Shown here: one piece after another, positions 2,878 through 56,783 of the stretch
How positions within the stretch are numbered: position 1 is the first letter of the stretch
How the letters are laid out: each line of letters begins with the position of its first letter
Source: Octopus bimaculoides
Lineage: Eukaryota
Length of the DNA: 58,403 nucleotides
Assembly: GCF_001194135.2 (NCBI RefSeq)
Contig: NC_069000.1
Span: 32,504,834 to 32,563,236 of the forward strand
Direction: 5' to 3'
Notes under the pieces: generated by a model
What the model saw: only the letters and a program-made list of their open reading frames with translations
Database searches by the model: none
Told to the model about the DNA's origin: nothing
Program-made: the position numbers and the translations under genes

Positions 2878-3277
2878 TGTAGCATATAATCATCATCATT
2901 AGTTGTAACATGTGTCAACTCCCACCGAGAAACATAAATATAAATAAAGAAAGCCACATTAATATGCTTACATAAGCTGCTAGTAATAGAAGCCAAATCT
3001 CCTTCAGATTACATAACATCATTATAACTAAGGAAACAACAAACTTAACCTAACCCTAATTACACAATCTTCAATAAATTTTGGAGGGTAAAGATGAAAT
3101 GCCTTTGGTTTTAGAGATCTACTCGATCAGGATTTACCTTGAACTAAATAAAAATTTGACTGTCATTGTTTGAAAGCCTTTGACCATGGTTCAACTCAAT
3201 GAGGTAGGTAGCGACACAGGGCTGAACAACATAATTAGCTATAGTGAAAATGAAGTGGTTACTATGCATAATAGATT

Positions 3278-3497
3278 GAAGGCGGCAAGCTGGCGAGAAT
3301 CGTTAGGACGCCGGGCGAAATGCCTTGCCGCAGTTCGTCCACCTGCAGATTCTGAGTTCAAATTCGGCCCAGGTTGATTTTGCCTTTCATCCTTTAGGGT
3401 CAATAAAAATAATAATAAGTACCAGTTGAACACTGGAGGCGGTGTAATCGACTTATCTCCCGATATTGCTGGCCTTGTACCAAAATTTGAAATAAAT
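3278..3497 (+). mobile_element. tRNA-derived SINE family A
   Basis: Full head, gagttcaaat B-box, gcctttcatccttt...gtaccagt and the ctggccttgtaccaaaatttgaaa tail. Confidence 0.88.
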
Positions 3498-4210
3498 ATG
3501 TATAACAGATTGTGCTGATTACAACGTGATATTATATAGTCCCTTGTTTACGGGAGAGTCAGGTGTGGAGCGTCTTTGTTCATATGTTTGTTCGATTAGA
3601 GCTAACCACTGGTTAAGCAACAAGAGCAATAACTTGTAGGATATTATTTCTATTTGTATATTTTTAGTTTTGCCACAACTAAACGACTTCCATAGAAGTT
3701 TTCATAAATGTTTAATTTCATGTCTGAATAAACAAGAAAATTAGAGAAGCGGGGAAGGCGGATAAATATAATAAATCGCCTGCAAAGAAAACCGTATTAT
3801 AAAATATTTTCTGTGTACACAGAATATCTAATAAGACTTTATTCCAATACGCAATGTTATGTTTGTTTGCCTGTTACATAATCAACTGTGTGACCTCATG
3901 TGTCATTAAAAAATTCCCTTTATCTGTAGTTTATCAAAAGACTATCAGCCGGTTGGATTATGGTTTCTTGTCAATACAGAAGAAATACTGACAACATATG
4001 TGATAAAAACATTTCAGTGAATACTCTGTGAATCCCACACTTTCCCATTGTATAACCGACAAGGATTTCCGTAACGTCTAAAATTATATCCCACCACGCC
4101 TATTGATCGCAGGTCTATGGGCCTCACCCGAGCAAACAATTGATAGAAATATGAAGATTTCTTATAGTGTTTCATGTTCTCCATACCATTATATACTTAT
4201 ATGACTTACT

Positions 4211-8935: not shown

Positions 8936-9854
8936 GGGTGCGAGAAAATGTTTGAGCATTAATTATTGTAGAGAAGATATGAAATCCAGAGGGAAGTAAG
9001 AGAATGAAAATAGAAGTGAGGTACCTAAGGATATTGTATTTGCAGTTCCATATATACATGCATTGAAGAAATAAGGATAAACAGAAATTTATATTATAGT
9101 TCCTGCCCGTTTCACCTTGGAGCACACCAATAGTGTTCCATTTGCATTTAAAAGCTCAACCACAACGTATCATCAGGAAATATTTTATTGCATAAAGTGA
9201 TAACTATGTCCCGCACCACACACACACACGCGTTGTCATTGTTAATCGGCGAATGTTACAGAGTAACTCAAGAGCTGTGAATTCTGTGCATTGTCATTTA
9301 TGAAACTGGTTTCCAATCAAAAGGATTACATTTAGATACCTGTGACAATGATATTTCCCCGGATTGTTCTAGAACAAATTATATGAAAGCCAATACAACG
9401 TCACGTGGATGATGCATATTCTTCAAAAGTTTTGCCCGTTACAATGTTCAGTAATATATATATAAGTAAATAACAAAAATATAAAAATATTTATTCATAT
9501 ATACACACGCACAAATGGTAATGCGTGTATGTAAACACTTCCTTTATTTGTTTCATTTATTCGGTCATGCTGGAGCACCGCATTGAAAATGTTTAGTCGA
9601 TCAAACCATTTGCTAAGGAAAACCATTTCAGGTTGTTTCAATTTACTCAGCTGAAAATGAGCCCCATCAGAGTACTGGCACAGCTCACTATTCAACCAAC
9701 TACCGTACACTGAATGTTTCTCTGGATCGAAAGACGAAGGTATCGGCGAAGTGTCTATGTCTGCTCGTGACTCCATAGGTGCCAAAACAATGATATAATT
9801 TTCAAAGCCATACTCGTTGGCGGCTGACAGTTGGCTCTTATAGCGTAACATAGG

Positions 9855-10218
9855 CGAGCTGGCAGAATTGTTGTTGTTGTTGTACAGAATGCTTTACGGT
9901 ATTACTTCTGATATTTAACATTCTGAGTTCAAATACTGCCTAGGTAAAATACAGTACGAACTCAATTATAGGGTTCAATGTAATCAACTAACCACCCTTC
10001 AAAACTTCTGGTCTTGTGCCTGAGCTAGCATGCTTACTTAGCGTTATTTCGTCCGTCGCTACGTTCTGAGTTCAAATTCCACCGAGGTCGATTTTGCCTT
10101 TCATCCTTTCGGAGTCGATAAATTAAATACCAGTGAAATACTGGGGTCAATGTAATGGACTAGTTGACTCCCTAAAATTTCAGGCCTTGTGCTTTTAATA
10201 GAAAGGATTATTATTATT
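9855..10218 (+). mobile_element. Two tandem SINE family A copies (9855-10022 internally deleted; 10030-10218 headless)
   Basis: Two ttctgagttcaaat B-box blocks and two ggtc(c)ttgtgc tails. Confidence 0.8.
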
Positions 10219-12964: not shown

Positions 12965-14715
12965 CTAGACTGGTGACTGGCAGAATCAGCAAAGCTAGAA
13001 TGAAAATGACTTTGGGGTATTCAGTTAAATTTCTTTACATTCTGAGATCAAATCAAGCTAAATATGGTGTTGTCTTATCAAGCTTCCTTGCTTAAGTACC
13101 GGAATATATTCTGCTACAGTTCACCCATCATTCGTAAAGCATACGTAAATCGTTATGTCCGCGTTACGATATGTTCGATTGTCTCTGTCACGTTATGTTC
13201 GAGTGTCGAACATAAGGCGTATAGCCTTTAGTTACGTGCCATCAGAATATGAGTTAAAAGCCAATCAAAGTCAACCTTGCTTTTCAGCCTTCCAAGTTTA
13301 ACAGCGGATGTGGAGAGTGAATTATATCAACAATATCCTTTACGTCCATGTAGTGCCTGAAAACGTTTCTTTAGTTAAGAACAACCATTATTATTAATGC
13401 TGTTTATAAAGCAGCGAGCTGGCTGAGACATTAGCACATAGGCAAACACCTGGTGGCATTTCGTCTGTGCTTACGTTCTGAGTTCAAATTCTGTCCAGGT
13501 CAGCTTTGCCTTTCATCATTTTAGGGGTCGATACATTAAGCAACAGTCGAGCACTGGGGGTCGATGTAACCGACTTATCACTTCCCCTAAAATTTCAGGC
13601 CTTCTGCCTAGAAGAGAAAGGGGTATTGATACCGTTTAAAAGTCGGTGAGGTGGCAGAATCGTTAGCACACGGTCCAAAATACTTAGCGGCATTTACCCT
13701 TCCTTGATATTGCTGGCCTTGTCCCGAAATTTAAACCATTTCTAATATTGCTTATAAAGCGGTGAGGTGGCAGAATCGTTAGCATGCTGGGAAAGATGCT
13801 TAGCAGCATTTCGTCCGTCTGTAACTTCTGAGTTCAAATGCCACCGAAGTCGACTTTACCTTACATCCTTCCAGAGTCAATAAAATAAGTAGCAGTTGAA
13901 TTCTGGGGCCATGTAATCGATTTGCTCCCGCCCCACCACAATTTAGGCGTTGTGCCTATAGCAGAAAGGATTATTTGTCCTAGAATCTGTAGAGTATCGA
14001 ATAAAATGTCATGCGATATCTTTTTTTTCCTGTTTTTTAAGTTCTGAATTCAATTCACTCTGGAGTCCAATTTACATTTCGTCCTTCCCGGTTCGAATAA
14101 CATAAGGTGTCAATCAAGTGTTGAGATCAATGGTACTGACTGCTCTGCATCCCATTAAAATTATTGTCCTTGTTCCTAAATTAGAAATTACTATTTTTAT
14201 TAAGGTAGTAAATTGGCAGTGCTGTCAGCGCATCTAAAAGGAATCTTTAGCGACATTTCTACCGGTTCTTTACATTCTAGGTTCAAATCACGCCGAGGTT
14301 AACTTTATCCCACATTTCATTGAGGTCGATAAAATGAGATACAAATGAAGTACAAGGGACAATGTAATCAAGTAACCCAAACCCAACTCACTCTCAAAAA
14401 CAATTCAGACCTTCCGTTTATTGTAGAAAGGGTGGTTATCTTGATTATTATTATTATATTTAAGGTGGGGAGCTGGCAGAATCGTTAGCGCGCTGGATGA
14501 AATACTTAGCGCTATTTCGCCTGTTGCTACGTTGAGTTCAAATTCCGCCGAGGTGGACTTTTCATCCTTCGGATTCGATAAATTAAGCACCAGTGTAACA
14601 CTTTCATCCTTCCGGGGTCAATAAAATAAGTTCCAGTTACGCACTGGAGTCGATGTAATCGACAGTCCCCTTCCCGCCAAAACTTTCCAGGCCTTGTGCT
14701 AAGAGTAGAAATAAT
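12965..14715 (+). mobile_element. Head-to-tail train of at least 7 SINE family A copies
   Basis: Starts near 12965, 13408, 13640, 13756, ~13981, 14201 and 14461. All are on the + strand and mutually diverged. Confidence 0.88.
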
Positions 14716-15949
14716 AATTATTATTTATTATCACCATTACCATCCCAGATATTAATTAATTCAGGGGTCATTCTCAACATTTTGATTAATGTTTTAGCTT
14801 CATCGATTCCTATTATTTTTACTTTGTAATTATGTGAGTTCACGCACTTTATCATAGTTGTTGGTGTTATGTTTGATAGTGGCTTTCTTGTGGTTGTAAT
14901 CATCATCATCGTCATTTCTTCTGCCGCTGCTGCTGTAATTGTTGTTGTTATTGTTATTGTTGTTGTTTAGTCGCCTTTTCAGCTCCGATCAAAGCCATTT
15001 TCAACTATAACCATTTTGTCCTATTTAAACATCAGGGATTTCATTGACGAATATTCCCTACTTTCTTAAAAATAATACCGTGTAATATGAATAGGATTTG
15101 GATGCTATTTGTAAGATGCTTTGTTTTCGTAATAATTATCCCTAACGTTGTTTTGGATGCTTTTGCTCCTTTTACTACATCTGTTCTTAGAGATATTTCT
15201 TTTGATTTTGCTTAAAAATTCACTGCAATAATTTTGTTATTGTTGTTGTTCCTTAAAGTATTATCCCTTGTTTCCTTGATTAAAGAACTGTTATTCTTAT
15301 TCTTGTTAATGTTATTAATGAGGTTATGTATTTTTTTAAATCGCTAATTTTATTAAGCTACTTTTCTTATTTTGATTTTAGCTATTATTTGAGTTATCAT
15401 TTCTTAGAATACGACTTAAGGGGTAGTTGTTGTGGTTGGTGTGGTTGTTGTGGTTATTCTGCTTGTAGTTGCCGCTGTTATAGCTGAAATTGCAATTATG
15501 GCTCTATTTCATCAATAAATGTTATAATTATTATAATTATCAGAATTATAATAATTATGACGATAATAACTTCATTAAAAGAAGTCAGCTGTTATTTCCT
15601 GTTCTCCCAATACAACTCAGCAACAACAAATAATAAGAACAATAAAACTAACAATGAATATAATGAGTCATATATTTATAGATATTATTACATACATACA
15701 CACACACAACACACACATACACATTGTATACGAGAGATGGTCAAAGGAAGTAGCATTCTACTCTGTAGGTAGGAATTAGATATAATTTTTAATGTCAGTT
15801 TGATTCCGCTCCATGCAACATATAAGCTCGTTGGTGTGTAGAAGGGGCCTATCTTGCGTCAGGCATATAGGTTCATTCTACGAACCAAGAAAGCCTGAGA
15901 TTGCATAGAATAGTTATTTGATATTAAAATCCACCCACTGTTGTCAATT

Positions 15950-19422: not shown

Positions 19423-20129
19423 NNNNNNNNNNNNNNNNNNNNNNNNNNNNNNNNNNNNNNNNNNNNNNNNNNNNNNNNNNNNNNNNNNNNNNNNNNNNNN
19501 NNNNNNNNNNNNNNNNNNNNNNNNNNNNNNNNNNNNNNNNNNNNNNNNNNNNNNNNNNNNNNNNNNNNNNNNNNNNNNNNNNNNNNNNNNNNNNNNNNNN
19601 NNNNNNNNNNNNNNNNNNNNNNNNNNNNNNNNNNNNNNNNNNNNNNNNNNNNNNNNNNNNNNNNNNNNNNNNNNNNNNNNNNNNNNNNNNNNNNNNNNNN
19701 NNNNNNNNNNNNNNNNNNNNNNNNNNNNNNNNNNNNNNNNNNNNNNNNNNNNNNNNNNNNNNNNNNNNNNNNNNNNNNNNNNNNNNNNNNNNNNNNNNNN
19801 NNNNNNNNNNNNNNNNNNNNNNNNNNNNNNNNNNNNNNNNNNNNNNNNNNNNNNNNNNNNNNNNNNNNNNNNNNNNNNNNNNNNNNNNNNNNNNNNNNNN
19901 NNNNNNNNNNNNNNNNNNNNNNNNNNNNNNNNNNNNNNNNNNNNNNNNNNNNNNNNNNNNNNNNNNNNNNNNNNNNNNNNNNNNNNNNNNNNNNNNNNNN
20001 NNNNNNNNNNNNNNNNNNNNNNNNNNNNNNNNNNNNNNNNNNNNNNNNNNNNNNNNNNNNNNNNNNNNNNNNNNNNNNNNNNNNNNNNNNNNNNNNNNNN
20101 NNNNNNNNNNNNNNNNNNNNNNNNNNNNN
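19423..20129. other. Assembly gap; further gaps at 32102-32849, 35992-36456, 46633-46663, 47771-48168 and 54253-54763
   Basis: Runs of N. Most abut a (TA)n tract on at least one side. Confidence 0.99.
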
Positions 20130-22749: not shown

Positions 22750-23555
22750 TCTTTATATTTTACTTGACAGCAGCCATACTGGGGTACTGTTTTCATGTGG
22801 TGTAGTCGAACAAATCAACCCCTGACTTATTTTGTTTTAAGCCTAGTACATATTATATCCGTAAGTTTGGCCGAACTGCTAAGACACGTGCACGAAATCA
22901 CAGCAACATCTGTAATAAAGACACACACCCATAGATATATATACATACACACACACACACACACACACATACACACACACACACCTCCCCCAGACACTTG
23001 ATGTAGGCTTCCGTGTTCAGTCTGAGGCCGTGTGAGATGAATGGAGGCATAACGTCGCCATCACTAGTGATCACTCCAAACACGGGATGTTGACTGGATG
23101 TTTGATTTTTATCACTGTCGGTACATGCACTGTCTCAGATTAACACCCAATCACTCTGAAATGTTTGTGTCGGAGCTTCTGGCGCAAATGCCAGGCAGTA
23201 CAGCATGTCGTTCCCAAATTTCTAGCAGAGTGAATTATGTCATGGTGCTGTTTTTATTTTTCACAGACGGTGCCCAATTGACCCTACTATACTGTGCAGT
23301 TGACAAAATCAAAAGCAAGCAATGCACATGCGCAAAATTAAAAATATAAAATGGTGACAATTTACTCATCATCTACTGTATATATATATAATACGAGCTG
23401 CTTTCAGTTTCCGTCTACCAAGTCTACTCACAAAGTTTTGGCCGGCCCGAGGCTATAGTAGAAGACACTTGCCCATGGTGCCACGCAGTGGGACCGAACT
23501 TGGATGTATGTGATTATGAAGTAAGCTTCTTACCATAAACCTAGGCCTGGGCCTA
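22750..23555 (-). mobile_element. SINE family B split by a mariner fragment at its internal microsatellite
   Basis: 3' body at 22750-22920 and head at 23385-23555; the mariner fragment 22985-23380 lies between them. Confidence 0.8.
22985..23380 (-). mobile_element. Internally deleted mariner-like fragment (5' TIR, HTH start, mid-transposase)
   Basis: Encodes FGVITSDGDVMPPFI.HGLRLNTEAYIKCL. 5' end tacagtagatgatgagtaaattgtcaccattttatattt is shared with the copy at 48222. Confidence 0.85.
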
Positions 23556-24479
23556 TGCATCATTTTTACAAGTAGCATCAGTCATGCATTGGATCATTAG
23601 TGTTGACTATGCTACTCACGTGTAAAAAGCATATTATGAGGCATAGAGCGACACAGAGGAGGATAAGAGAATGCGGTGGAGAAAAAGAGAGATACTGTAC
23701 ACACTGCCGAAGTGGTATGTCTTGAAATACTGAATATGATGACGTAAGCAATTCTGCGGTCCCTACGAATTACCGGACAGCAGAATTCCCTTTTCATTAC
23801 GATTTTATTAAAGCTGGAAGTCTTTGAGTTAGCCGCTATCTCTTCACCTCTGGAGTAAATAATTCAATATTTCTCTCCTCCCCTTTCTTCCTCACTCTTC
23901 ACCTTTCTCTCTGTCTCTGGCTCTCTCTTTCTCACTCTCTCTTATTCTGTTATTGTCTCTTTTTTCGCTCCGTCTCATTTTCTATGTCTTTCATTTTCTA
24001 CTCCACCTTCCCCTTATTTTCTTTCTTTCTTTCTTTCTCTCTCCCTCCCTGACATCCTCCGTCCCTTCTTTCTCTCTCTCTCCCTTTCTCTCTCCCCACC
24101 GCGTCTGTTTCTCTGCTAATATCTTTCTCGAATCACACCAATCACTAGATCTGAGCCGAAAGTTGATTAGATTTCAAAAGACCTTCCGCCACCGACGCTC
24201 TCTCACCAAAAATTAAATACAAAAACGACGACGACGAAAACAACAACAACAGCAAAAACAACAACAACAACAACGATGATGATGCTGATGATGATGTGTG
24301 CTCGTGAAAGCAAATCTGGTAAATGTCGTGTACAGAGATAAATTGAACATGTCAGCTGTCCTCTCAGCATTTGATTTACAGTAGTTAATTATTTGGCAGC
24401 TCTGCTAAACCTCAGCTATGATTGCTTTAGACGTTTAACAATCCTCGCACGCTTTGAGCGTGTGAGGTGTCAAACATCG

Positions 24480-24698
24480 TCATGTTCGTCGACGTTCGTT
24501 GTCATCCACCACTTCCTCTTCCTCCTCCAAGTTACCAGCATCATCATCATCATCATCATCATTGTCGACTTCGCTGCCACCGACATCTTCGTCATCATAT
24601 TCACCATCGTCAACATTATCTTCCAAACACCACTACCACTACCATCGCCGTCGTCGTCGTCGTTGTCGTCGTCGTTGTCGTCGTCGTCATCATCATCG

Positions 24699-24734
<36 letters not shown>

Positions 24735-25000
24735 CCATCATTGTCGTCGTCTTCGCCACCACTAACACTGCCTTTTAATTATCACTACTATACCGTCACC
24801 TCCACCCACCATTGTCATCGCTGCCACTTCTACCATCATCAGAAGCAGCAGCATCGGCAGCACTTGCAACACCACTTGTACCACCAGCACCACCGCCACC
24901 ACCACCACCATCCTTATCATTATTGCTACTACATCATTACCACCCTTATCATATTTCCACTACCACCACCAGCAAAACCACTATCATCATCGTCATCATT
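24480..25000. repeat. Compound and cryptic trinucleotide tract (CAT/CGT/CAC)
   Basis: Direct reading. Similar tracts lie at ~30270-30420 and ~39040-39330. Confidence 0.9.
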
Positions 25001-25400
25001 ATTAATCGTCCTATTTGTTCACTTAATTAAACAGAATCAGAAATCAGTATATTATCAAGCAAGGCACCTATTTAGCTTTAAGAAGATTATCGATAAAATG
25101 CATTACGAATGAATTCCCACTTTGGCCTAATGGAGAGAATCTCCTGAAATGTAAGCAACATAGTCGATTGATTCGATTCGTATATGACTGGTATGTAATT
25201 TAAGCATCCCTCGACAGTCGACTGAAGTGCAATTTCAAATCTGAGATTTAAGGCATGGCAGTTTTACTTTATTTGAGATCGTGTATTGAAACTGGAAATA
25301 TTCCTTCATTATGTAATAAATCACAGATTAGAAGTTAATTACTCGGAAAGATAAATGTATAGCTAATGACAAAACAAATGGAAAAGCTTAAAGAAAATAT

Positions 25401-50479: not shown

Positions 50480-53400
50480 AGTCAAACAGATTTAAATGTA
50501 AAACTATTTACAATCCACTGTCCCTGTAAGCACCCACGCGTCTACAACGAAATACTAAGATACGCAGCATCTCTTTACGCGCTAGACTTCGCATATACCG
50601 GGAGTGCAATTTCCCTCATCTACCAGGTACAAGACCCTAATGAATAAAAACAACTCCAACCATAGCACTTTTGCTACATCTGCACCAACACCAAAATCTA
50701 AATCAATTTGTAACCCTAAAATCTGCTACTATCCTCATCACTGGGGATTATGTCTACAACAAAAGTGTACGTTTACGCATCTACCCGGGACTTGAAATAT
50801 CATCGTTATCAACATATTCATCCATCCTCAAAGTCTCCATAAAACACACCGTTTTGCAGAAGTACCAGCATGTGCTTTTCCCTCAACTGAGGTCCCAAGA
50901 CCGCACCCAGCAAGAGCAAAGGCAAAACAAAGTCAACGGCCCCGACACAAATCTTTCCACCAACTCGGGAAACTGGAGAACATTTAGTAGGGACCTTAGC
51001 AAATCAAACAATCAACAGAACTGTCAGTGTAACCACAACTTCAGCCAACAAATTCTCCCTAGCAAGATAAATTGTTTTGTTTTTTCATTCATGCGCAACC
51101 TTACAAAAGAAATTCAGAAAAGTATCTAGGCTATCACATACAACCAACCCCTGACATTACCCCTGTACAGAAACTACCTTCCTCGCTGCCATTAAGCCTT
51201 AGGAATCTTTTGAGCACCACTCCAATCTCAACGTGTTTGCTGAATGCACAAAGCATCAGTCCATTTTTCAACTAAAAATTATAGGTTTAGTTATTAAGCT
51301 TCGGGTTACCGACTATCTTCATCATATTCCATTCTTGGTTTTTACTGAGACTCACCTTAACGACACTCGTAAACTGAAATAAAAGAGAGGAATTACACCA
51401 CCGTTCTCGCAGACTGCACCGGTAAAACAAAGGGAGGAGTTGCTATTTTTCTCCACGACTCATCTATTGCAGATACAAGTGTTTCTTTCTCCAATGGTTG
51501 TAATGAATCTATGTATACCAAAAGTAATGATATAGCAATGATTTTGCGCTACAGTCCACCCGAAGCACCATTACCGTGTTTCAAATATTACCGCATAAAT
51601 ACTAAGCCTTCCATTCACCAATTCCAATTTGATAATATTTTAGTAATGATTGACTGGTCTACTTATTCCTTGAAGAGAGCTGTATGCAATTCAGTCTCAG
51701 AGAAAGCAGCAAAGGAATCATTTTTCGAATTCCTGAACGAATTTTTCCTGTCCATACTCATGCTCGTGCCAACAAGATTCAATAAAAATACATTGGACTT
51801 AGTGTTTAGTAACCCCTTTTACTCTGAACATAATATTATAGAAGAAAAACTTTCTCTTCCGACCACGATATGGTTTTCTGTATTTTGAGATTCCGGCAAA
51901 CAAAACTGATGAAGTACGATCTCACTCCAGCACACCCGTTTGGCCTCATAGAGCAACACAGTGCTAAAAGGAATGCAGTTACACACGATCTTTCCGTCAT
52001 TGATTGGACTTTTACTCTCTGTCTCTCTCTCACTCCAAGTAGTATCAATACATCCTGGCAGCTATTTGTGAATGTTGTCACAAGTATATGTTCACACTGC
52101 ACTCCACTACGGACCAAGAGCAAAACTAAACACGGGCTCCCAGTAACAGAAGAGCACATATAATAATAAAAACGACTAACTGAAAAACCAACTGGCGAGA
52201 ATATTGTCAACTGCAATGCCCGCACTTGACAGATATAGTCTTATTGGAATCGAAGAAACATTATCTTCAAAACTGCATAAGGACTATCATTGATAGTCAA
52301 AGAATAGCAGGTGAAAGTGGGCCATTGAGAAAATAAAAGTCAATACCAAATTGTTTTCGTTCGCTAAAAAGCTGTGTCATCTGTTGGACCTGTGGTGGAT
52401 GAAGACAACAGCCCGCACAGAAACATGGTTGAGAATTTGCAGAAACAATGCTGTTCCACTTTCTACAATCCCAGCTTGGTCAGTCCTGACAGTATCGGTG
52501 AAACAAAGCCCCATCACACCCTCTAATATATCATTTGGCACCACAGATCTCATAGCAGCTATAAACAAAATTACAAACAACTTAGAAGCTGGTTATATTC
52601 CTGAAAATTTCCTTTCCCAGCCGATTATCCCACTTTTCAAAAAGGCAACCAATTGCTAACAGTGAATTACCGACCGATGTCACTTACCTTTCATATCATC
52701 AAATTATATTGAGCGTGATGAGATATCAAGTAACTCACTTCGTGTTGTCATCTATCTGGACTCCAGCAAGGCCTTCGGCCAAGGTGACCGCAGCATCCTG
52801 CTAAAGAAACTATCGAACACCGGAGTCCGAGGGAAACCATTAAAGTTGATTAAATGAATTCTGGTGAAGAGAACCCAGCATGTGGTGATAGATGGTGTTC
52901 GATCAAGCTCGGTAAGAGTTATCAGTGGAGTCCCACAATACACTGTACTGGGTCCAAACCCTTTTTATTTACGTCAATGATATCATTGACGCCATCAGCA
53001 GCATTAGAATATTCGCAGATGACGTTAAGCTTCTGAAATTCTTTCGGCAATGCAGGAGACCGAACTAATCTCTAATAGGATCTGCTGGCTTTTATCGGAT
53101 GCGCGGGAAAACACAATATGTAGCTAAATGAAAATAAATTTTAACTAATCTACTTTAGTAAAGAGTCTACACTTAAACTATCATACACTCTTCCCTCGAG
53201 CGAAAACCTTGTCGCATCGAACACAGCTAGGGAGCTCGCAGTAACTGTCAACAACTTAAGCTGGTGTGTCAACATAAACAATTAATTCGACATGGCCGAC
53301 AGGGCGTGTTCCTGAATCGTTGAAGACTTTTCGGTCTTGAGACCCTCCTACCATTATCTTTGTGTTCTTGATTTTCACCTGTCTTCACCTTAAATATTGT

Positions 53401-53870: not shown

Positions 53871-54974
53871 TCAAAGAATGATTGTAAGAAGGAAATATTA
53901 TTAAATATCTTTTCCAAATGGTACTATTAATTTCGACATATCCTGGGCCAGTTCTTAGCGAAACTTATCTAAGTATATATAAGTTTTACACGCATGTATA
54001 GATACAATACTAGAACACATTATCAGTCCTGTATACTTTGATTCAGTGGATATCTGGACATTACAATAACCAACTTCAGTCAGGTGACCCGAGATAAGAC
54101 ACGAACACCAAATGACTGCATGATGCATTATTGAAGATATGCTCAAGAAGTACATCTGTAGATCTATATAGAACACACATAATTACACAAGCACAAACAC
54201 GCACACACCAACACATACACACACACGTATATATATATATATATATATATATNNNNNNNNNNNNNNNNNNNNNNNNNNNNNNNNNNNNNNNNNNNNNNNN
54301 NNNNNNNNNNNNNNNNNNNNNNNNNNNNNNNNNNNNNNNNNNNNNNNNNNNNNNNNNNNNNNNNNNNNNNNNNNNNNNNNNNNNNNNNNNNNNNNNNNNN
54401 NNNNNNNNNNNNNNNNNNNNNNNNNNNNNNNNNNNNNNNNNNNNNNNNNNNNNNNNNNNNNNNNNNNNNNNNNNNNNNNNNNNNNNNNNNNNNNNNNNNN
54501 NNNNNNNNNNNNNNNNNNNNNNNNNNNNNNNNNNNNNNNNNNNNNNNNNNNNNNNNNNNNNNNNNNNNNNNNNNNNNNNNNNNNNNNNNNNNNNNNNNNN
54601 NNNNNNNNNNNNNNNNNNNNNNNNNNNNNNNNNNNNNNNNNNNNNNNNNNNNNNNNNNNNNNNNNNNNNNNNNNNNNNNNNNNNNNNNNNNNNNNNNNNN
54701 NNNNNNNNNNNNNNNNNNNNNNNNNNNNNNNNNNNNNNNNNNNNNNNNNNNNNNNNNNNNNNNTATACACGCACATATACTTACATATAGATGTATGTAT
54801 GCGGGCATGCAAAAATGTATGCATATTCTCGATTTGTGATAACCATTTGTCATAGAGTTTATGAAACTCTTGGCTATCGGCATATAACATCTACGTAATA
54901 TAAGTAAACTCTATATTCTGTATTGAATACTTTCTTGTTCGATATAAACAATACTTATATATATATATATATAT

Positions 54975-55160
54975 GGGAGAATTCACGAAAAAACAACAGA
55001 CGAAGACAGGTGGTGTAAACAACAAATGGATGTATTAGTATTACGCTCAGGAATAGAGAAAGTCTTTAACGTTTCGAGCCTACGCTCTTCAACAGAAAGG
55101 AACACAGAAAGAAACAAGGAGAGAAAAAAAATATATGTATTGGTCAGCGATCTATCATAT
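54975..55160 (-). mobile_element. Penelope-like terminal-repeat remnant carrying a minimal hammerhead-like motif (55064-55099)
   Basis: Minus strand cttt-ctgttga-a-gagc-gtag-gctc-gaaa-c-gtt-aaag. Confidence 0.6.
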
Positions 55161-55257
55161 ACCTACATACATACATATACATATGTTCGTATATATATTG
55201 TATATATATATGTGTGTGTGTAAGTGTATACATCTATGTATAAAGATTGAAACGTAC

Positions 55258-56159
55258 CTCGGACTAGAATATCTTCCTTTTCAATTTTGTCTCCTGTTAT
55301 CTGATTCTGTACTTCCGATTCTTTAGACTGAATGCCATTGTCTCTGACGCAGAATTTCGCTGCACACACCTCCTTTGTTTGAATCTCGTTGCGCATTTGT
55401 AAAGCTTGTCTGGAATATTGCTGAGGCTCAACTTGTAATTGTGGGCGCTGTTGTCGAGGAAGTGGTGGTTTTTGATGTAGATGTTGATGTTGTTGTTGAA
55501 GTTGTTGTTGTTGGTGGTGGTGGTTTTGTTGGTTTGGTGGGGGTTGTTGTTGTTGTTGTTGCTGGTGTTGTTGTGGTGATTTCCTGTGTTGTTCTTGTAG
55601 TTGTAAATGTTGTTGTTGCTGGTGTGGAGGCGACTTATTTTGTTGCGATTGTGGCGGATGCTGTGAAGGGTGCTGTTGAGGTTGCAGTTGTTGATGTTGT
55701 TGTGGTGAATGGGGTGAGTTGGGTGACTTTGGCGATTTTGGCGATATCGGTGACTTTGGTGATTTTGGCGATTTGGGTGATTTTGGCGATTGCGGTGGTG
55801 CTTGTTGATTATATTGCTGTTGTGGATGTAGAGGATGCTGCTGCGGTTGTAGTTGCAAATGATGCTCTTGTGGTAATTGTAGCTGCCTTAGATTTAGAGG
55901 AGAGGAACGCAAGTTTAATGGAGAGTTTCTGGTGATCATCTGTTCATCATTTTGTTCCGGTTGTTGCTTCTGCTTTTGAAGCTGATACTGTGGCTGCTGT
56001 GTCTGCTGATGAAGATGATGATGCTGAAGAAGATGATGTTGATGATGAAGAAGATGATGAGGTTGTTGCTGTTGTTGTTGCTGTTGCTGCTGCTGATGTT
56101 GCTGTTGTTGTTGCTGTTGCGGTTGTTGTGGATGTTGTTGCTGCTGTTTTTGCTGTTGC

Positions 56160-56199
<40 letters not shown>

Positions 56200-56290
56200 G
56201 CTGTTGTTGTTGTTGTTGTTGTTGTTGTTGTAACTCATAACGGTGTGGAGAGCAATTGGTCACAATATCATGTTCTTGTTTTGGCAACAT
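55258..56290 (-). CDS. Candidate protein-coding exon: polyQ/His/Pro-rich region with (S-P-K)n repeats and tandem SPLNLR motifs; product unknown, possibly a nuclear regulatory protein
   Basis: Frame open across 55163-56344. ATG at 56290-56288 (MLPKQEHDIV) in aaaacgATG context. SPLNLR is encoded twice with 7 differences, all synonymous (55886-55924). All Ser and Pro variation across 10 SP units is synonymous (55703-55789). Complex tail QMRNEIQTKEVCAAKFCVRDNGIQSKESEVQNQITGDKIEKEDILVR ends at donor GAG|GTACGT (GT at 55257-55256, phase 1). The 5' boundary is uncertain. Confidence 0.6.
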
Positions 56291-56783
56291 CGTTTTAGAA
56301 ATGCTTTTGTTGGTTTGTTTGTTTTTTTTTCTGCTTTTCTTCAAAATTTTAATTATAACTCTATTTATAATAACTACAATTTATTTTAATTTTTATATTC
56401 TACAAATTTCTGAGGATTATTCAGAAATCTTACTTCGTCAACACAAACCAACTGTGCTACAGAGATACTAAGATGTTGATGCTAAAAGCAATAAATTTAA
56501 TATTAATGTTGATATTACTGTTTCTATTTTTGGAGCTCTGGATAATGTTGGTGTTGACCCTGGTGCTGTTGCTGAAGCTGCTGTCCTAGGCGTAGTTGTT
56601 ATTGATATTGGTGGTGTTATAATAGATGGTGCTGATGATGGTGATGCTGCTGTAAATGGTAGTGATAGTTTTGGTGCGGTTGCTTGTGTTCTCGCTGTTG
56701 TTTTACACCGAGTCATTATGTTACTAATGCATCATCCATTGATTTACAATAGCTAGTTAGAAGTACATATAGAAATAAACACA

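What the first reader, a model, noticed from the sequence alone, without database searches (positions are those of the whole stretch)
55258..56290. Coding exon hidden in apparent simple repeat: polyQ/His protein segment ending at a splice donor
Seen: about 344 codons rich in CAA/CAG contain no TAA/TAG reversion. The neighbouring CAN-type tract (56468-56716) has three such stops in about 70 codons of the equivalent frame, which acts as an internal control. The other two minus frames are broken. After the low-complexity part comes a ~50-aa normal-complexity segment and a GAG|GTACGT donor. Inference: this is a large first or early coding exon of a gene running leftwards, which repeat masking would likely hide. 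Positions 1-55 kb could then be largely its intron(s).
Basis: partly seen in the sequence, partly recalled or inferred. Interest (0 to 1): 0.72.

Follow-up and report, generated by a model that had tools for sequence, protein, structure and literature searches.

The report
Probable polyglutamine-rich first coding exon
A 1-kb glutamine/histidine/proline-rich open reading frame on the minus strand is most likely a real but ordinary low-complexity protein-coding exon of an animal gene, although no transcript or related sequence could be found to prove it.

Summary
From ATG 56290 the minus strand reads 344 codons without a stop, down to GAG|GTACGT (intron GT at 55257-55256). The stop-free frame (55166-56380, 405 codons) is the longest in the window. 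The other two minus frames have 7 and 9 stops.

Tests calibrated inside the window favour selection for an open, translated frame:
- Three other CAN-type tracts carry 22 in-frame stops in 232 codons; the exon has 0 in 344 (Fisher p = 2.5e-9).
- A tandem peptide repeat, SPLNLR x2, differs at 7 of 18 bases, all synonymous.

Two arguments proved weak. Third-position bias inside the CAA array also occurs in non-coding arrays here. A 245-codon open frame also occurs in junk-like low-complexity DNA at 24375-25109.

The exon end is ambiguous: GAG|GTGTGT at 55369 scores the same as the proposed donor. The start looks like a first coding exon.

No homologue, Pfam domain or downstream exon was found. 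The databases do not seem to hold this animal, so that silence says little.

The predicted product is disordered, an opa/CAX-like Q/H-rich N-terminus with 15 Ser-Pro sites. This is a known kind of feature and of low interest. The claim that 1-55 kb is intron is untested.

The parts
55258..56290 (-). Proposed coding exon: ATG plus 344 codons plus 1 nt (phase 1), encoding a Q/P/H/L/S-rich low-complexity polypeptide
   Evidence: no stop; 37.5% Q; stop depletion against control tracts, p = 2.5e-9.
56288..56290 (-). Candidate initiator ATG (context aaaacgATGt, A at -3)
   Evidence: first ATG after the upstream in-frame stop; no ATG in any frame between 56400 and 56291.
56381..56383 (-). Upstream in-frame stop that closes the open frame on the 5' side
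   Evidence: the stop-free frame spans 55166-56380.
56362..56369 (-). TATAAATA, a possible TATA box 79 nt upstream of the ATG (inferred, not shown)
   Evidence: 21 matches in the window on both strands (9.4 expected), so the chance of one in a given 80-nt window on one strand is about 1-2%; the local DNA is 22% GC.
56063..56233 (-). Main CAA/CAG (opa/CAX-like) tract, residues 20-76, with a longest run of 27 Q, interrupted by K, H and P
   Evidence: The third-position bias here ([2,3,15]) is not diagnostic, because non-coding arrays show the same bias.
56003..56062 (-). His/Leu tract PHHLLHHQHHLLQHHHLHQQ (CAT/CTT repeats)
55883..55924 (-). Tandem peptide repeat SPLNLR(S)/SPLNLR(Q): 7 of 18 bases differ, all synonymous
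   Evidence: codons; simulation, P about 3e-5; the most DNA-diverged of 328 identical hexapeptide pairs in all six frames of the window.
55700..55789 (-). Ten 9-bp units encoding SPK/SPI/SPN/SPH/SPQ (Ser-Pro repeats)
   Evidence: 12 of 15 differences from the consensus unit lie at third codon positions. Higher-order periods of 18, 27 and 36 mean the differences are not independent events.
55478..55618 (-). Second, more degenerate Q/H/P-rich tract (residues 225-271), in the same reading phase as the first
55259..55471 (-). Normal-complexity C-terminal segment of the exon (71 aa, KPPLPR...EDILVR)
   Evidence: the composition score ranks 4th of 138 ORFs in the window, but its last 37 aa rank 95th of 726; helix predicted for residues 294-307 at low confidence.
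55252..55260 (-).
   Evidence: 9.6 bits, tied for best among the 26 GT sites scored.
55364..55372 (-). Alternative donor GAG|GTGTGT (GT at 55369-55368), phase 0; the exon would then be 307 codons
   Evidence: the same score, 9.6 bits.
54957..55158 (.). Dispersed repeat copy about 100 nt beyond the proposed donor; marks non-coding (intron-like) DNA
   Evidence: 83% identical over 207 bp to 48904-49109, in the same orientation.
56452..56748 (-). Decayed CAN (Q/H-like) tract upstream of the ATG; serves as an internal control
   Evidence: 9 stops in 99 codons of the CAN frame.

Best explanation
The interval is a genuine protein-coding exon on the minus strand, most likely the first coding exon of a spliced animal gene. 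It begins at ATG 56290. It ends at one of two consensus GT donors, 55257 (phase 1) or 55369 (phase 0). It encodes about 310-345 residues of intrinsically disordered, glutamine/histidine/proline-rich sequence. This comprises an opa/CAX-like polyQ tract with His interruptions, a His/Leu tract, a duplicated SPLNLR motif, ten Ser-Pro-Lys-type units, and a short charged tail.

Shown here:
- The open frame.
- Its depletion of stops relative to sister tracts in the same window.
- Conservation of a peptide repeat despite diverged DNA.
- The consensus donors.
- The absence of a confident fold.

Inferred:
- That it is transcribed and spliced.
- That the ATG is the initiator.
- That the product is the flexible N-terminal region of a nuclear regulatory protein. 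In that reading the Q/H-rich part would be an interaction or activation region and the Ser-Pro sites would be targets of proline-directed kinases. The structured domains would be encoded further left, beyond what could be recognised in or outside the window.
For: - ORF anatomy.
- Internal controls: the three other CAN tracts of the window have 22 stops in 232 codons and the exon has 0 in 344. On non-CAN codons this is 0/183 against 22/136, Fisher p = 2.5e-9. Among NAA/NAG codons, T is the commonest non-C first base in the controls (13 of 28) and is absent from the exon (0 of 31).
- The open frame is the CAA frame. This is the only phase of a CAA repeat that a single C-to-T change turns into a stop, yet the other two phases carry the stops (7 and 9).
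- SPLNLR x2: 7 synonymous and 0 non-synonymous differences. Simulation gives P about 3e-5, and the pair is the top outlier of 328 pairs in all six frames.
- Only 38% of codons are still CAA/CAG, so the sequence has diverged far from a pure array without acquiring a stop.
- Exon-like edges: two 9.6-bit donors; a dispersed repeat starts 100 nt beyond the second donor; an ATG with A at -3, no upstream ATG, no good acceptor, and TATAAATA at -79.
- GC is 43% in the ORF, against 30% and 22% in the flanks.
- AlphaFold2 on the single sequence gives mean pLDDT 45.8 and pTM 0.22, with 279 of 344 residues below 50. This is consistent with disorder.
Against: - There is no external support at all. A word-indexed search with the C-terminal 74 aa found nothing.
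- phmmer of the whole exon against 1.84 billion representative proteins gave only 2 spurious repeat matches.
- No exact gene product is on record. Metagenome contigs gave nothing.
- There is no Pfam family. The only PDB matches are repeat artefacts.
- No downstream minus-strand ORF has a Pfam domain or a homologue.
- A 245-codon open frame with the same 0/7/9 stop pattern occurs in junk-like low-complexity DNA at 24375-25109. Long open frames therefore do arise here without obvious coding.
- Third-position bias in the polyQ array is matched by non-coding arrays.
- The last 37 residues are compositionally indistinguishable from non-coding translation.
- The frame stays open for 31 codons past the proposed donor, into TA/CA microsatellite.
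- The region was selected because it is open, which inflates every p-value by a modest multiple-testing factor.
Confidence: 0.7

Rival explanations
1. Non-coding, cryptically simple DNA: a cluster of CAA/CAT/CCA-type microsatellites and their decay products that happens to be open in one frame. It would be intronic, intergenic, or part of a non-coding transcript or UTR.
For: - The window is full of trinucleotide arrays. 13.5% of it lies in tandem repeats, with 31 period-3 arrays.
- A second long open frame (245 codons, stops 0/7/9) lies in low-complexity DNA at 24375-25109.
- Position bias within arrays is not specific to coding sequence.
- No homologue or domain was found anywhere.
Against: - Every other CAN tract in the window is riddled with in-frame stops (22 in 232 codons) while this one has none in 344 (p = 2.5e-9).
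- The open frame is the mutationally most vulnerable one.
- The SPLNLR peptide is kept across 39% DNA divergence.
- At 405 codons the frame is far beyond the window's empirical tail (245, 187, 171, 164 ...).
- Consensus donors sit exactly where complexity and GC content drop.
Confidence: 0.15
2. A translated ORF with a different architecture from the one proposed. It could be an unspliced single-exon or lineage-restricted (orphan, possibly microsatellite-born) gene ending at the stop at 55163-55165. It could be an internal exon entered from an upstream 5' exon. Or it could be a recently inactivated gene fragment.
For: - The frame continues 31 codons beyond the donor to a stop at 55163.
- There is no detectable relative among 1.84 billion representatives and no recognisable downstream exon in 55 kb.
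- A decayed sister tract lies just upstream at 56452-56748, which suggests local birth and decay of such sequence.
Against: - The 31-codon tail is TA/CA microsatellite (GTFQSLYIDVYTYTHTYIYTIYIRTYVYVCM), which is unlike the rest.
- Two strong donors precede it.
- There is no acceptor with a pyrimidine tract in the open stretch upstream of the ATG.
- The absence of homologues is uninformative. Even the window's mariner-like transposase finds nothing closer than 57% identity, so the collections seem to lack this animal.
Confidence: 0.15

Closest known systems
opa (CAX) repeats: polyglutamine tracts with histidine interruptions encoded in exons of Notch and many transcriptional regulators (Wharton et al. 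1985, as reviewed in PMC4632060)
   Same: - A run of CAA/CAG codons with CAY (His) interruptions, read as poly-Q/H.
- It is embedded in a larger disordered region.
- The tract is long enough (27 uninterrupted Q, 57-codon array) to trouble short-read assembly and masking, as that paper describes for Notch.
   Different: - CAA, not CAG, is the main codon here (95 against 34).
- The Q/H/P-rich low-complexity region spans about 270 residues rather than about 31.
- It sits at the N-terminus of an unidentified product.
- No DNA-binding, cofactor or signalling domain has been linked to it, and expression is not shown.
Q/H/P-rich intrinsically disordered (prion-like or activation-type) N-terminal regions of animal nuclear proteins (general knowledge, not tested here)
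   Same: - The composition (37.5% Q, 11.6% P, 9.3% H).
- No confident fold (pLDDT 45.8).
- Many Ser-Pro sites (15).
   Different: Nuclear localisation, partners and function are all unknown. There is no homologue to transfer annotation from.
Non-coding trinucleotide microsatellites of the same window (for example (TAG)96 at 27635-27922, and the CAN tracts at 14840-14983, 39130-39384 and 56452-56748)
   Same: - Period-3 arrays with no indels.
- Position-biased mismatches.
   Different: Those tracts carry stops in the corresponding frame (22 in 232 codons) and are 150-300 bp long. This one is stop-free over 1 kb and includes non-repetitive segments and a conserved peptide repeat.

Membership tests
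opa/CAX-type coding polyglutamine repeat | A tandem run of CAR codons, with occasional CAY, read in the Gln/His frame | tested here: met
   Residues 20-76 are 57 codons, mostly CAA/CAG, with H, K and P interruptions; the longest run is 27 Q.
opa/CAX-type coding polyglutamine repeat | The repeat lies in a translated exon, with the frame kept open by selection | tested here: inconclusive
   The internal controls strongly favour selection against stops, and a peptide repeat is conserved. There are no transcript, orthologue or peptide data, and a 245-codon open frame in junk-like DNA shows the null distribution has a heavy tail.
opa/CAX-type coding polyglutamine repeat | The host protein is a regulatory protein with recognisable functional domains | tested here: inconclusive
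   No Pfam domain in the exon or in minus-strand ORFs of the window, and no homologue. Exon-sized fragments are hard to detect: the window's own transposase pieces also missed Pfam at E <= 0.01.
First coding exon of a GT-AG spliced gene | An initiator ATG in a favourable context, with no upstream ATG and no acceptor in front of it | tested here: met
   A at -3; no ATG between 56400 and 56291; an in-frame stop at 56381-56383; the AG sites upstream have a pyrimidine fraction of 0.53 or less within the open stretch.
First coding exon of a GT-AG spliced gene | A consensus 5' splice site at the end of the coding segment | tested here: met
   GAG|GTACGT at 55257 scores 9.6 bits; but GAG|GTGTGT at 55369 scores the same, so the boundary is ambiguous.
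First coding exon of a GT-AG spliced gene | Transcription and a splice junction to a downstream exon | not testable with these tools
Neutral (non-coding) microsatellite cluster | Stops and frame breaks accumulate in every frame as the array decays | tested here: not met
   0 stops in 344 codons although 62% of the codons are no longer CAR. The control tracts have 9.5% stops.
Transposable-element ORF | Other copies in the genome, or similarity to transposase, RT or gag-like proteins | tested here: not met
   The only self-matches in the window are simple-repeat matches. There is no Pfam hit and no homologue.

The most novel reading that the evidence does not exclude
The ORF is a lineage-restricted gene, or gene extension, whose coding sequence was built largely by expansion and divergence of CAA-type microsatellites. 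The decayed CAN tract just upstream (56452-56748) would be a discarded sibling. On this reading, the absence of the ORF from 1.84 billion representative proteins is real and not a gap in database coverage.
Probability: 0.12. Interest if true: 0.45.

Novelty: new member of a known kind. Interest (0 to 1): 0.2.

Why it matters
If real, this is one more low-complexity N-terminal exon that automated annotation could truncate or miss. That matters locally for the gene model of this locus. It also illustrates that hard-masking of simple repeats can remove coding sequence. It does not change any concept, because polyQ/His (opa-like) coding repeats in animal regulatory genes have been known since 1985.

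The most reusable result is methodological. Sister tracts of the same repeat type in the same window make a good calibrated control for the question 'is this repeat coding?'. By contrast, ORF length and third-position bias inside arrays are poor evidence in microsatellite-rich genomes.

Tried and rejected
- Homology searches gave nothing useful:
  - C-terminal 74 aa by word-indexed search: no candidate.
  - Whole exon by phmmer against 1.84e9 representatives: 2 hits, both repeat artefacts (an FN3-repeat protein and a PKG/KAP-repeat protein).
  - Exact-product look-ups for the ATG-start and TTG-start ORFs: none.
  - Back-translated scan of JGI metagenome contigs: none.
  - PDB sequences: only (PKG)10/collagen peptides and the polyQ of FAM155A.
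  - Pfam on the exon: none.
- Search for the rest of the gene:
  - Pfam on all minus-strand ORFs of at least 45 aa, concatenated: no family.
  - A 4.9-kaa concatenate of 68 downstream minus-strand ORFs against 5.8e9 proteins: nothing.
- Organism and database-coverage test: the mariner-like transposase at 37.6-38.5 kb found only relatives at 57% identity or less. The collections therefore probably lack this animal, and the negative results above are weak.
- Arguments I first liked and then rejected after calibration:
  - CAG (34) against CGA (2), and third-position mismatch bias in the polyQ array. Non-coding arrays show equal or stronger bias.
  - The base-composition expectation of 13.8 stops. 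The comparator ORF at 24375-25109 beats the same null.
  - Amino-acid composition of the last 37 residues, which is not distinctive.
- Rfam and tRNA scans of the window were empty.
- No other copy of the exon exists in the window, so it is not a dispersed repeat.
- The literature search found nothing specific to polyQ exons in cephalopods.

Full report
**What is there**

The window is a gapped eukaryotic scaffold. It has six runs of N and is about 36% G+C. 13.5% of it lies in tandem repeats, including 31 period-3 arrays.

On the minus strand an ATG at 56290 opens 344 codons without a stop. The frame runs down to CGAG|GTACGT, with the last exon base at 55258 and the intron GT at 55257-55256. 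The stop-free frame as a whole spans 55166-56380 (405 codons). It is the longest in any of the six frames; the next independent one has 245 codons. The other two minus frames have 7 and 9 stops, and the plus frames have 3, 22 and 26.

The translation is 37.5% Q, 11.6% P, 9.3% H, 7.6% L and 6.1% S. Its parts, in order:
- a 19-residue ordinary N-terminus;
- a 57-codon CAA/CAG tract with a run of 27 Q;
- a His/Leu tract;
- a mixed segment with SPLNLR twice in tandem;
- ten Ser-Pro-Lys-type 9-bp units;
- a second degenerate Q/H/P tract;
- a 71-residue tail of normal complexity.

Only 49% of the codons lie in arrays that Tandem Repeats Finder reports. The neighbouring control tract has 8 stops in 82 codons of the equivalent frame, not three.

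**Is it more than chance?**

I tried to calibrate each argument inside the window. Two arguments failed.

First, the excess of third-position changes in the polyQ array ([2,3,15] by codon position; CAG 34 against CGA 2) is not a coding signal here. Non-coding arrays show the same or stronger bias: [24,3,3] at 27635-27922, [24,1,4] at 50186-50327 and [2,2,15] at 24645-24741.

Second, 'no stop where base composition predicts 13.8' is also true of a 245-codon frame in junk-like I/S/H-rich DNA at 24375-25109 (+). That frame has the same 0/7/9 stop pattern and 180 codons outside tandem arrays. Long open frames do arise in this kind of DNA.

Two arguments survived.

(a) Sister tracts. The three other CAN-type tracts of the window (14840-14983, 39130-39384, 56452-56748) carry 22 in-frame stops in 232 codons. 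Among their NAA/NAG codons, T is the commonest non-C first base (13 of 28), as expected from C-to-T transitions. The exon has C 129, A 18, G 13 and T 0. On non-CAN codons the comparison is 0/183 against 22/136, Fisher p = 2.5e-9. This holds even though 62% of the exon's codons are no longer CAA/CAG. It also holds although the CAA phase is the only phase of a CAA repeat that one substitution can turn into a stop.

(b) A peptide-level repeat. SPLNLR occurs twice in tandem (55883-55924). It is encoded by TCT CCA TTA AAC TTG CGT and TCT CCT CTA AAT CTA AGG, which differ at 7 of 18 bases, all synonymous. Random placement of 7 substitutions keeps the peptide in about 3e-5 of trials. Among all 328 pairs of identical hexapeptides (at least 4 residue types, 6-60 residues apart) in all six frames of the window, this pair is the most diverged at the DNA level. 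The next pairs have 5, 5 and 4 differences.

The SPK units add weaker support: 12 of 15 differences are at third positions. The units are not independent, because the array has higher-order periods.

**Edges**

At the 3' end a simple donor matrix gives two tied best sites among the 26 GT sites scored.

The 71-residue tail as a whole looks protein-like by composition (rank 4 of 138). Its last 37 residues, which are coding only if the second donor is used, do not (rank 95 of 726). The frame then runs 31 more codons through TA/CA microsatellite to a stop at 55163. A dispersed repeat, 83% identical to 48904-49109, begins about 100 nt beyond the second donor. G+C falls from 43% in the ORF to 30% downstream and 22% upstream.

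At the 5' end the ATG has A at -3, and no ATG in any frame occurs in the 110 nt upstream. An in-frame stop lies at 56381-56383, and no AG in the open stretch has a pyrimidine tract. TATAAATA lies 79 nt upstream. That motif occurs 21 times in the window, so this is only a hint. Together these features fit a first coding exon.

**External evidence**

There is none.
- The C-terminal 74 residues found no candidate in the word-indexed search.
- phmmer of the whole exon against 1.84 billion representatives returned two repeat artefacts.
- Exact-product look-ups found nothing, and metagenome contigs gave nothing.
- Pfam gave nothing, and the PDB gave only repeat artefacts.
- No minus-strand ORF downstream has a Pfam family or a homologue.

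I do not read this as evidence against coding. The window's own mariner-like transposase (37.6-38.5 kb) finds nothing closer than 57% identity, so the collections appear not to contain this animal or its close relatives. Exon-sized fragments are also hard to detect: the transposase pieces missed Pfam too.

**What it most likely is and does**

The best explanation (confidence about 0.7) is a genuine first coding exon encoding a disordered Q/H/P/S-rich N-terminal region. AlphaFold2 on the single sequence gives mean pLDDT 45.8 and pTM 0.22. Only the polyQ run is modelled as a helix, at moderate confidence.

By analogy with opa/CAX repeats and Q-rich regions of transcriptional regulators (PMC4632060), the product may be the flexible interaction or activation region of a nuclear regulator. 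This rests on general knowledge and is not shown here. Its 15 Ser-Pro sites could be targets of proline-directed kinases.

The rivals are a fortuitously open cluster of decayed microsatellites (0.15) and a translated ORF with a different architecture, namely unspliced or orphan, an internal exon, or a recent pseudogene (0.15).

**Comparison and novelty**

The tract meets the sequence definition of an opa/CAX repeat. Membership of the class 'coding polyQ repeat in a regulatory gene' lacks the decisive features, which are expression and a linked functional domain. It is a new member of a known kind. The idea that masking could hide it is reasonable but only half applies, and I could not check any annotation. 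The suggestion that 1-55 kb is this gene's intron remains untested. Interest is low (0.2).

Noticed in passing
window 24375-25109 (+): A 245-codon stop-free frame in I/S/H-rich low-complexity DNA. Its stops per frame are 0/7/9, the same as the exon, and 180 codons lie outside tandem arrays. The translation looks junk-like. It is either a striking chance event or another low-complexity coding piece. It weakens arguments based on ORF length.
   Followed up: partly
window 56452-56748 (-): A decayed Q/H-like CAN tract about 160 nt upstream of the candidate ATG, with 9 stops in 99 codons. It resembles the exon's His/Gln composition (HHHHQHHLL) but has no detectable DNA homology to it beyond simple repeats. 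It may be a dead sibling tract or part of the 5' region.
   Followed up: partly
window about 37600-38500 (-): A frameshifted Tc1/mariner-like DDE_3 transposase remnant, with an HTH part and DDE pieces in three frames. The best database relatives are 46-57% identical and carry PF13358. Further short transposase-like pieces lie at 22901-23134 (-) and 48228-48581 (+).
   Followed up: partly
window about 51370-53070 (+): Fragments of a non-LTR retrotransposon. There is a weak Exo_endo_phos_2 match (E = 0.015). RT-like motifs seen by eye (YLDSSKAFG..., IFADDVKL) appear in neighbouring plus-strand ORFs. It lies 2-4 kb to the left of the exon, on the opposite strand.
   Followed up: no
window 54957-55158 and 48904-49109: Two copies of a dispersed repeat of about 205 bp, 83% identical and in the same orientation.
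   Followed up: partly
window 28964-29469 (-); also 3242-3547, 13687-13833, 26249-26383 (-): A SINE-like repeat family, recognisable by similar pseudo-translations (WSLIYRPRKDERQSRPRWNLKSE..., GTRPAIS...). Three tandem copies about 184 bp apart lie at 28964-29469. No tRNA-like hit was found by ARAGORN or Rfam.
   Followed up: no
window 27635-27922 (+): A very long (TAG)n array of 96 units, 90% pure, plus many other trinucleotide arrays (AGT, TTA, ATT, CTT, GTG). Their mismatches are strongly biased to one position of the unit, although they are non-coding.
   Followed up: yes
window 9495-9893 (-): A normal-complexity open frame of 118-131 codons (MLRYKSQLSAANEYGFENYIIVLAPMESRADIDTSP...). It has no Pfam family and no homologue. 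Its length is within chance expectation for this window (my own rough estimate from base composition, not a tool result).
   Followed up: partly
window 19423-20129, 32102-32849, 35992-36456, 46633-46663, 47771-48168, 54253-54763: Six assembly gaps (runs of N), mostly flanked by TA/CA microsatellites. The gap at 54253-54763 lies only 0.5 kb beyond the exon's proposed donor, so nearby downstream sequence is incomplete.
   Followed up: no
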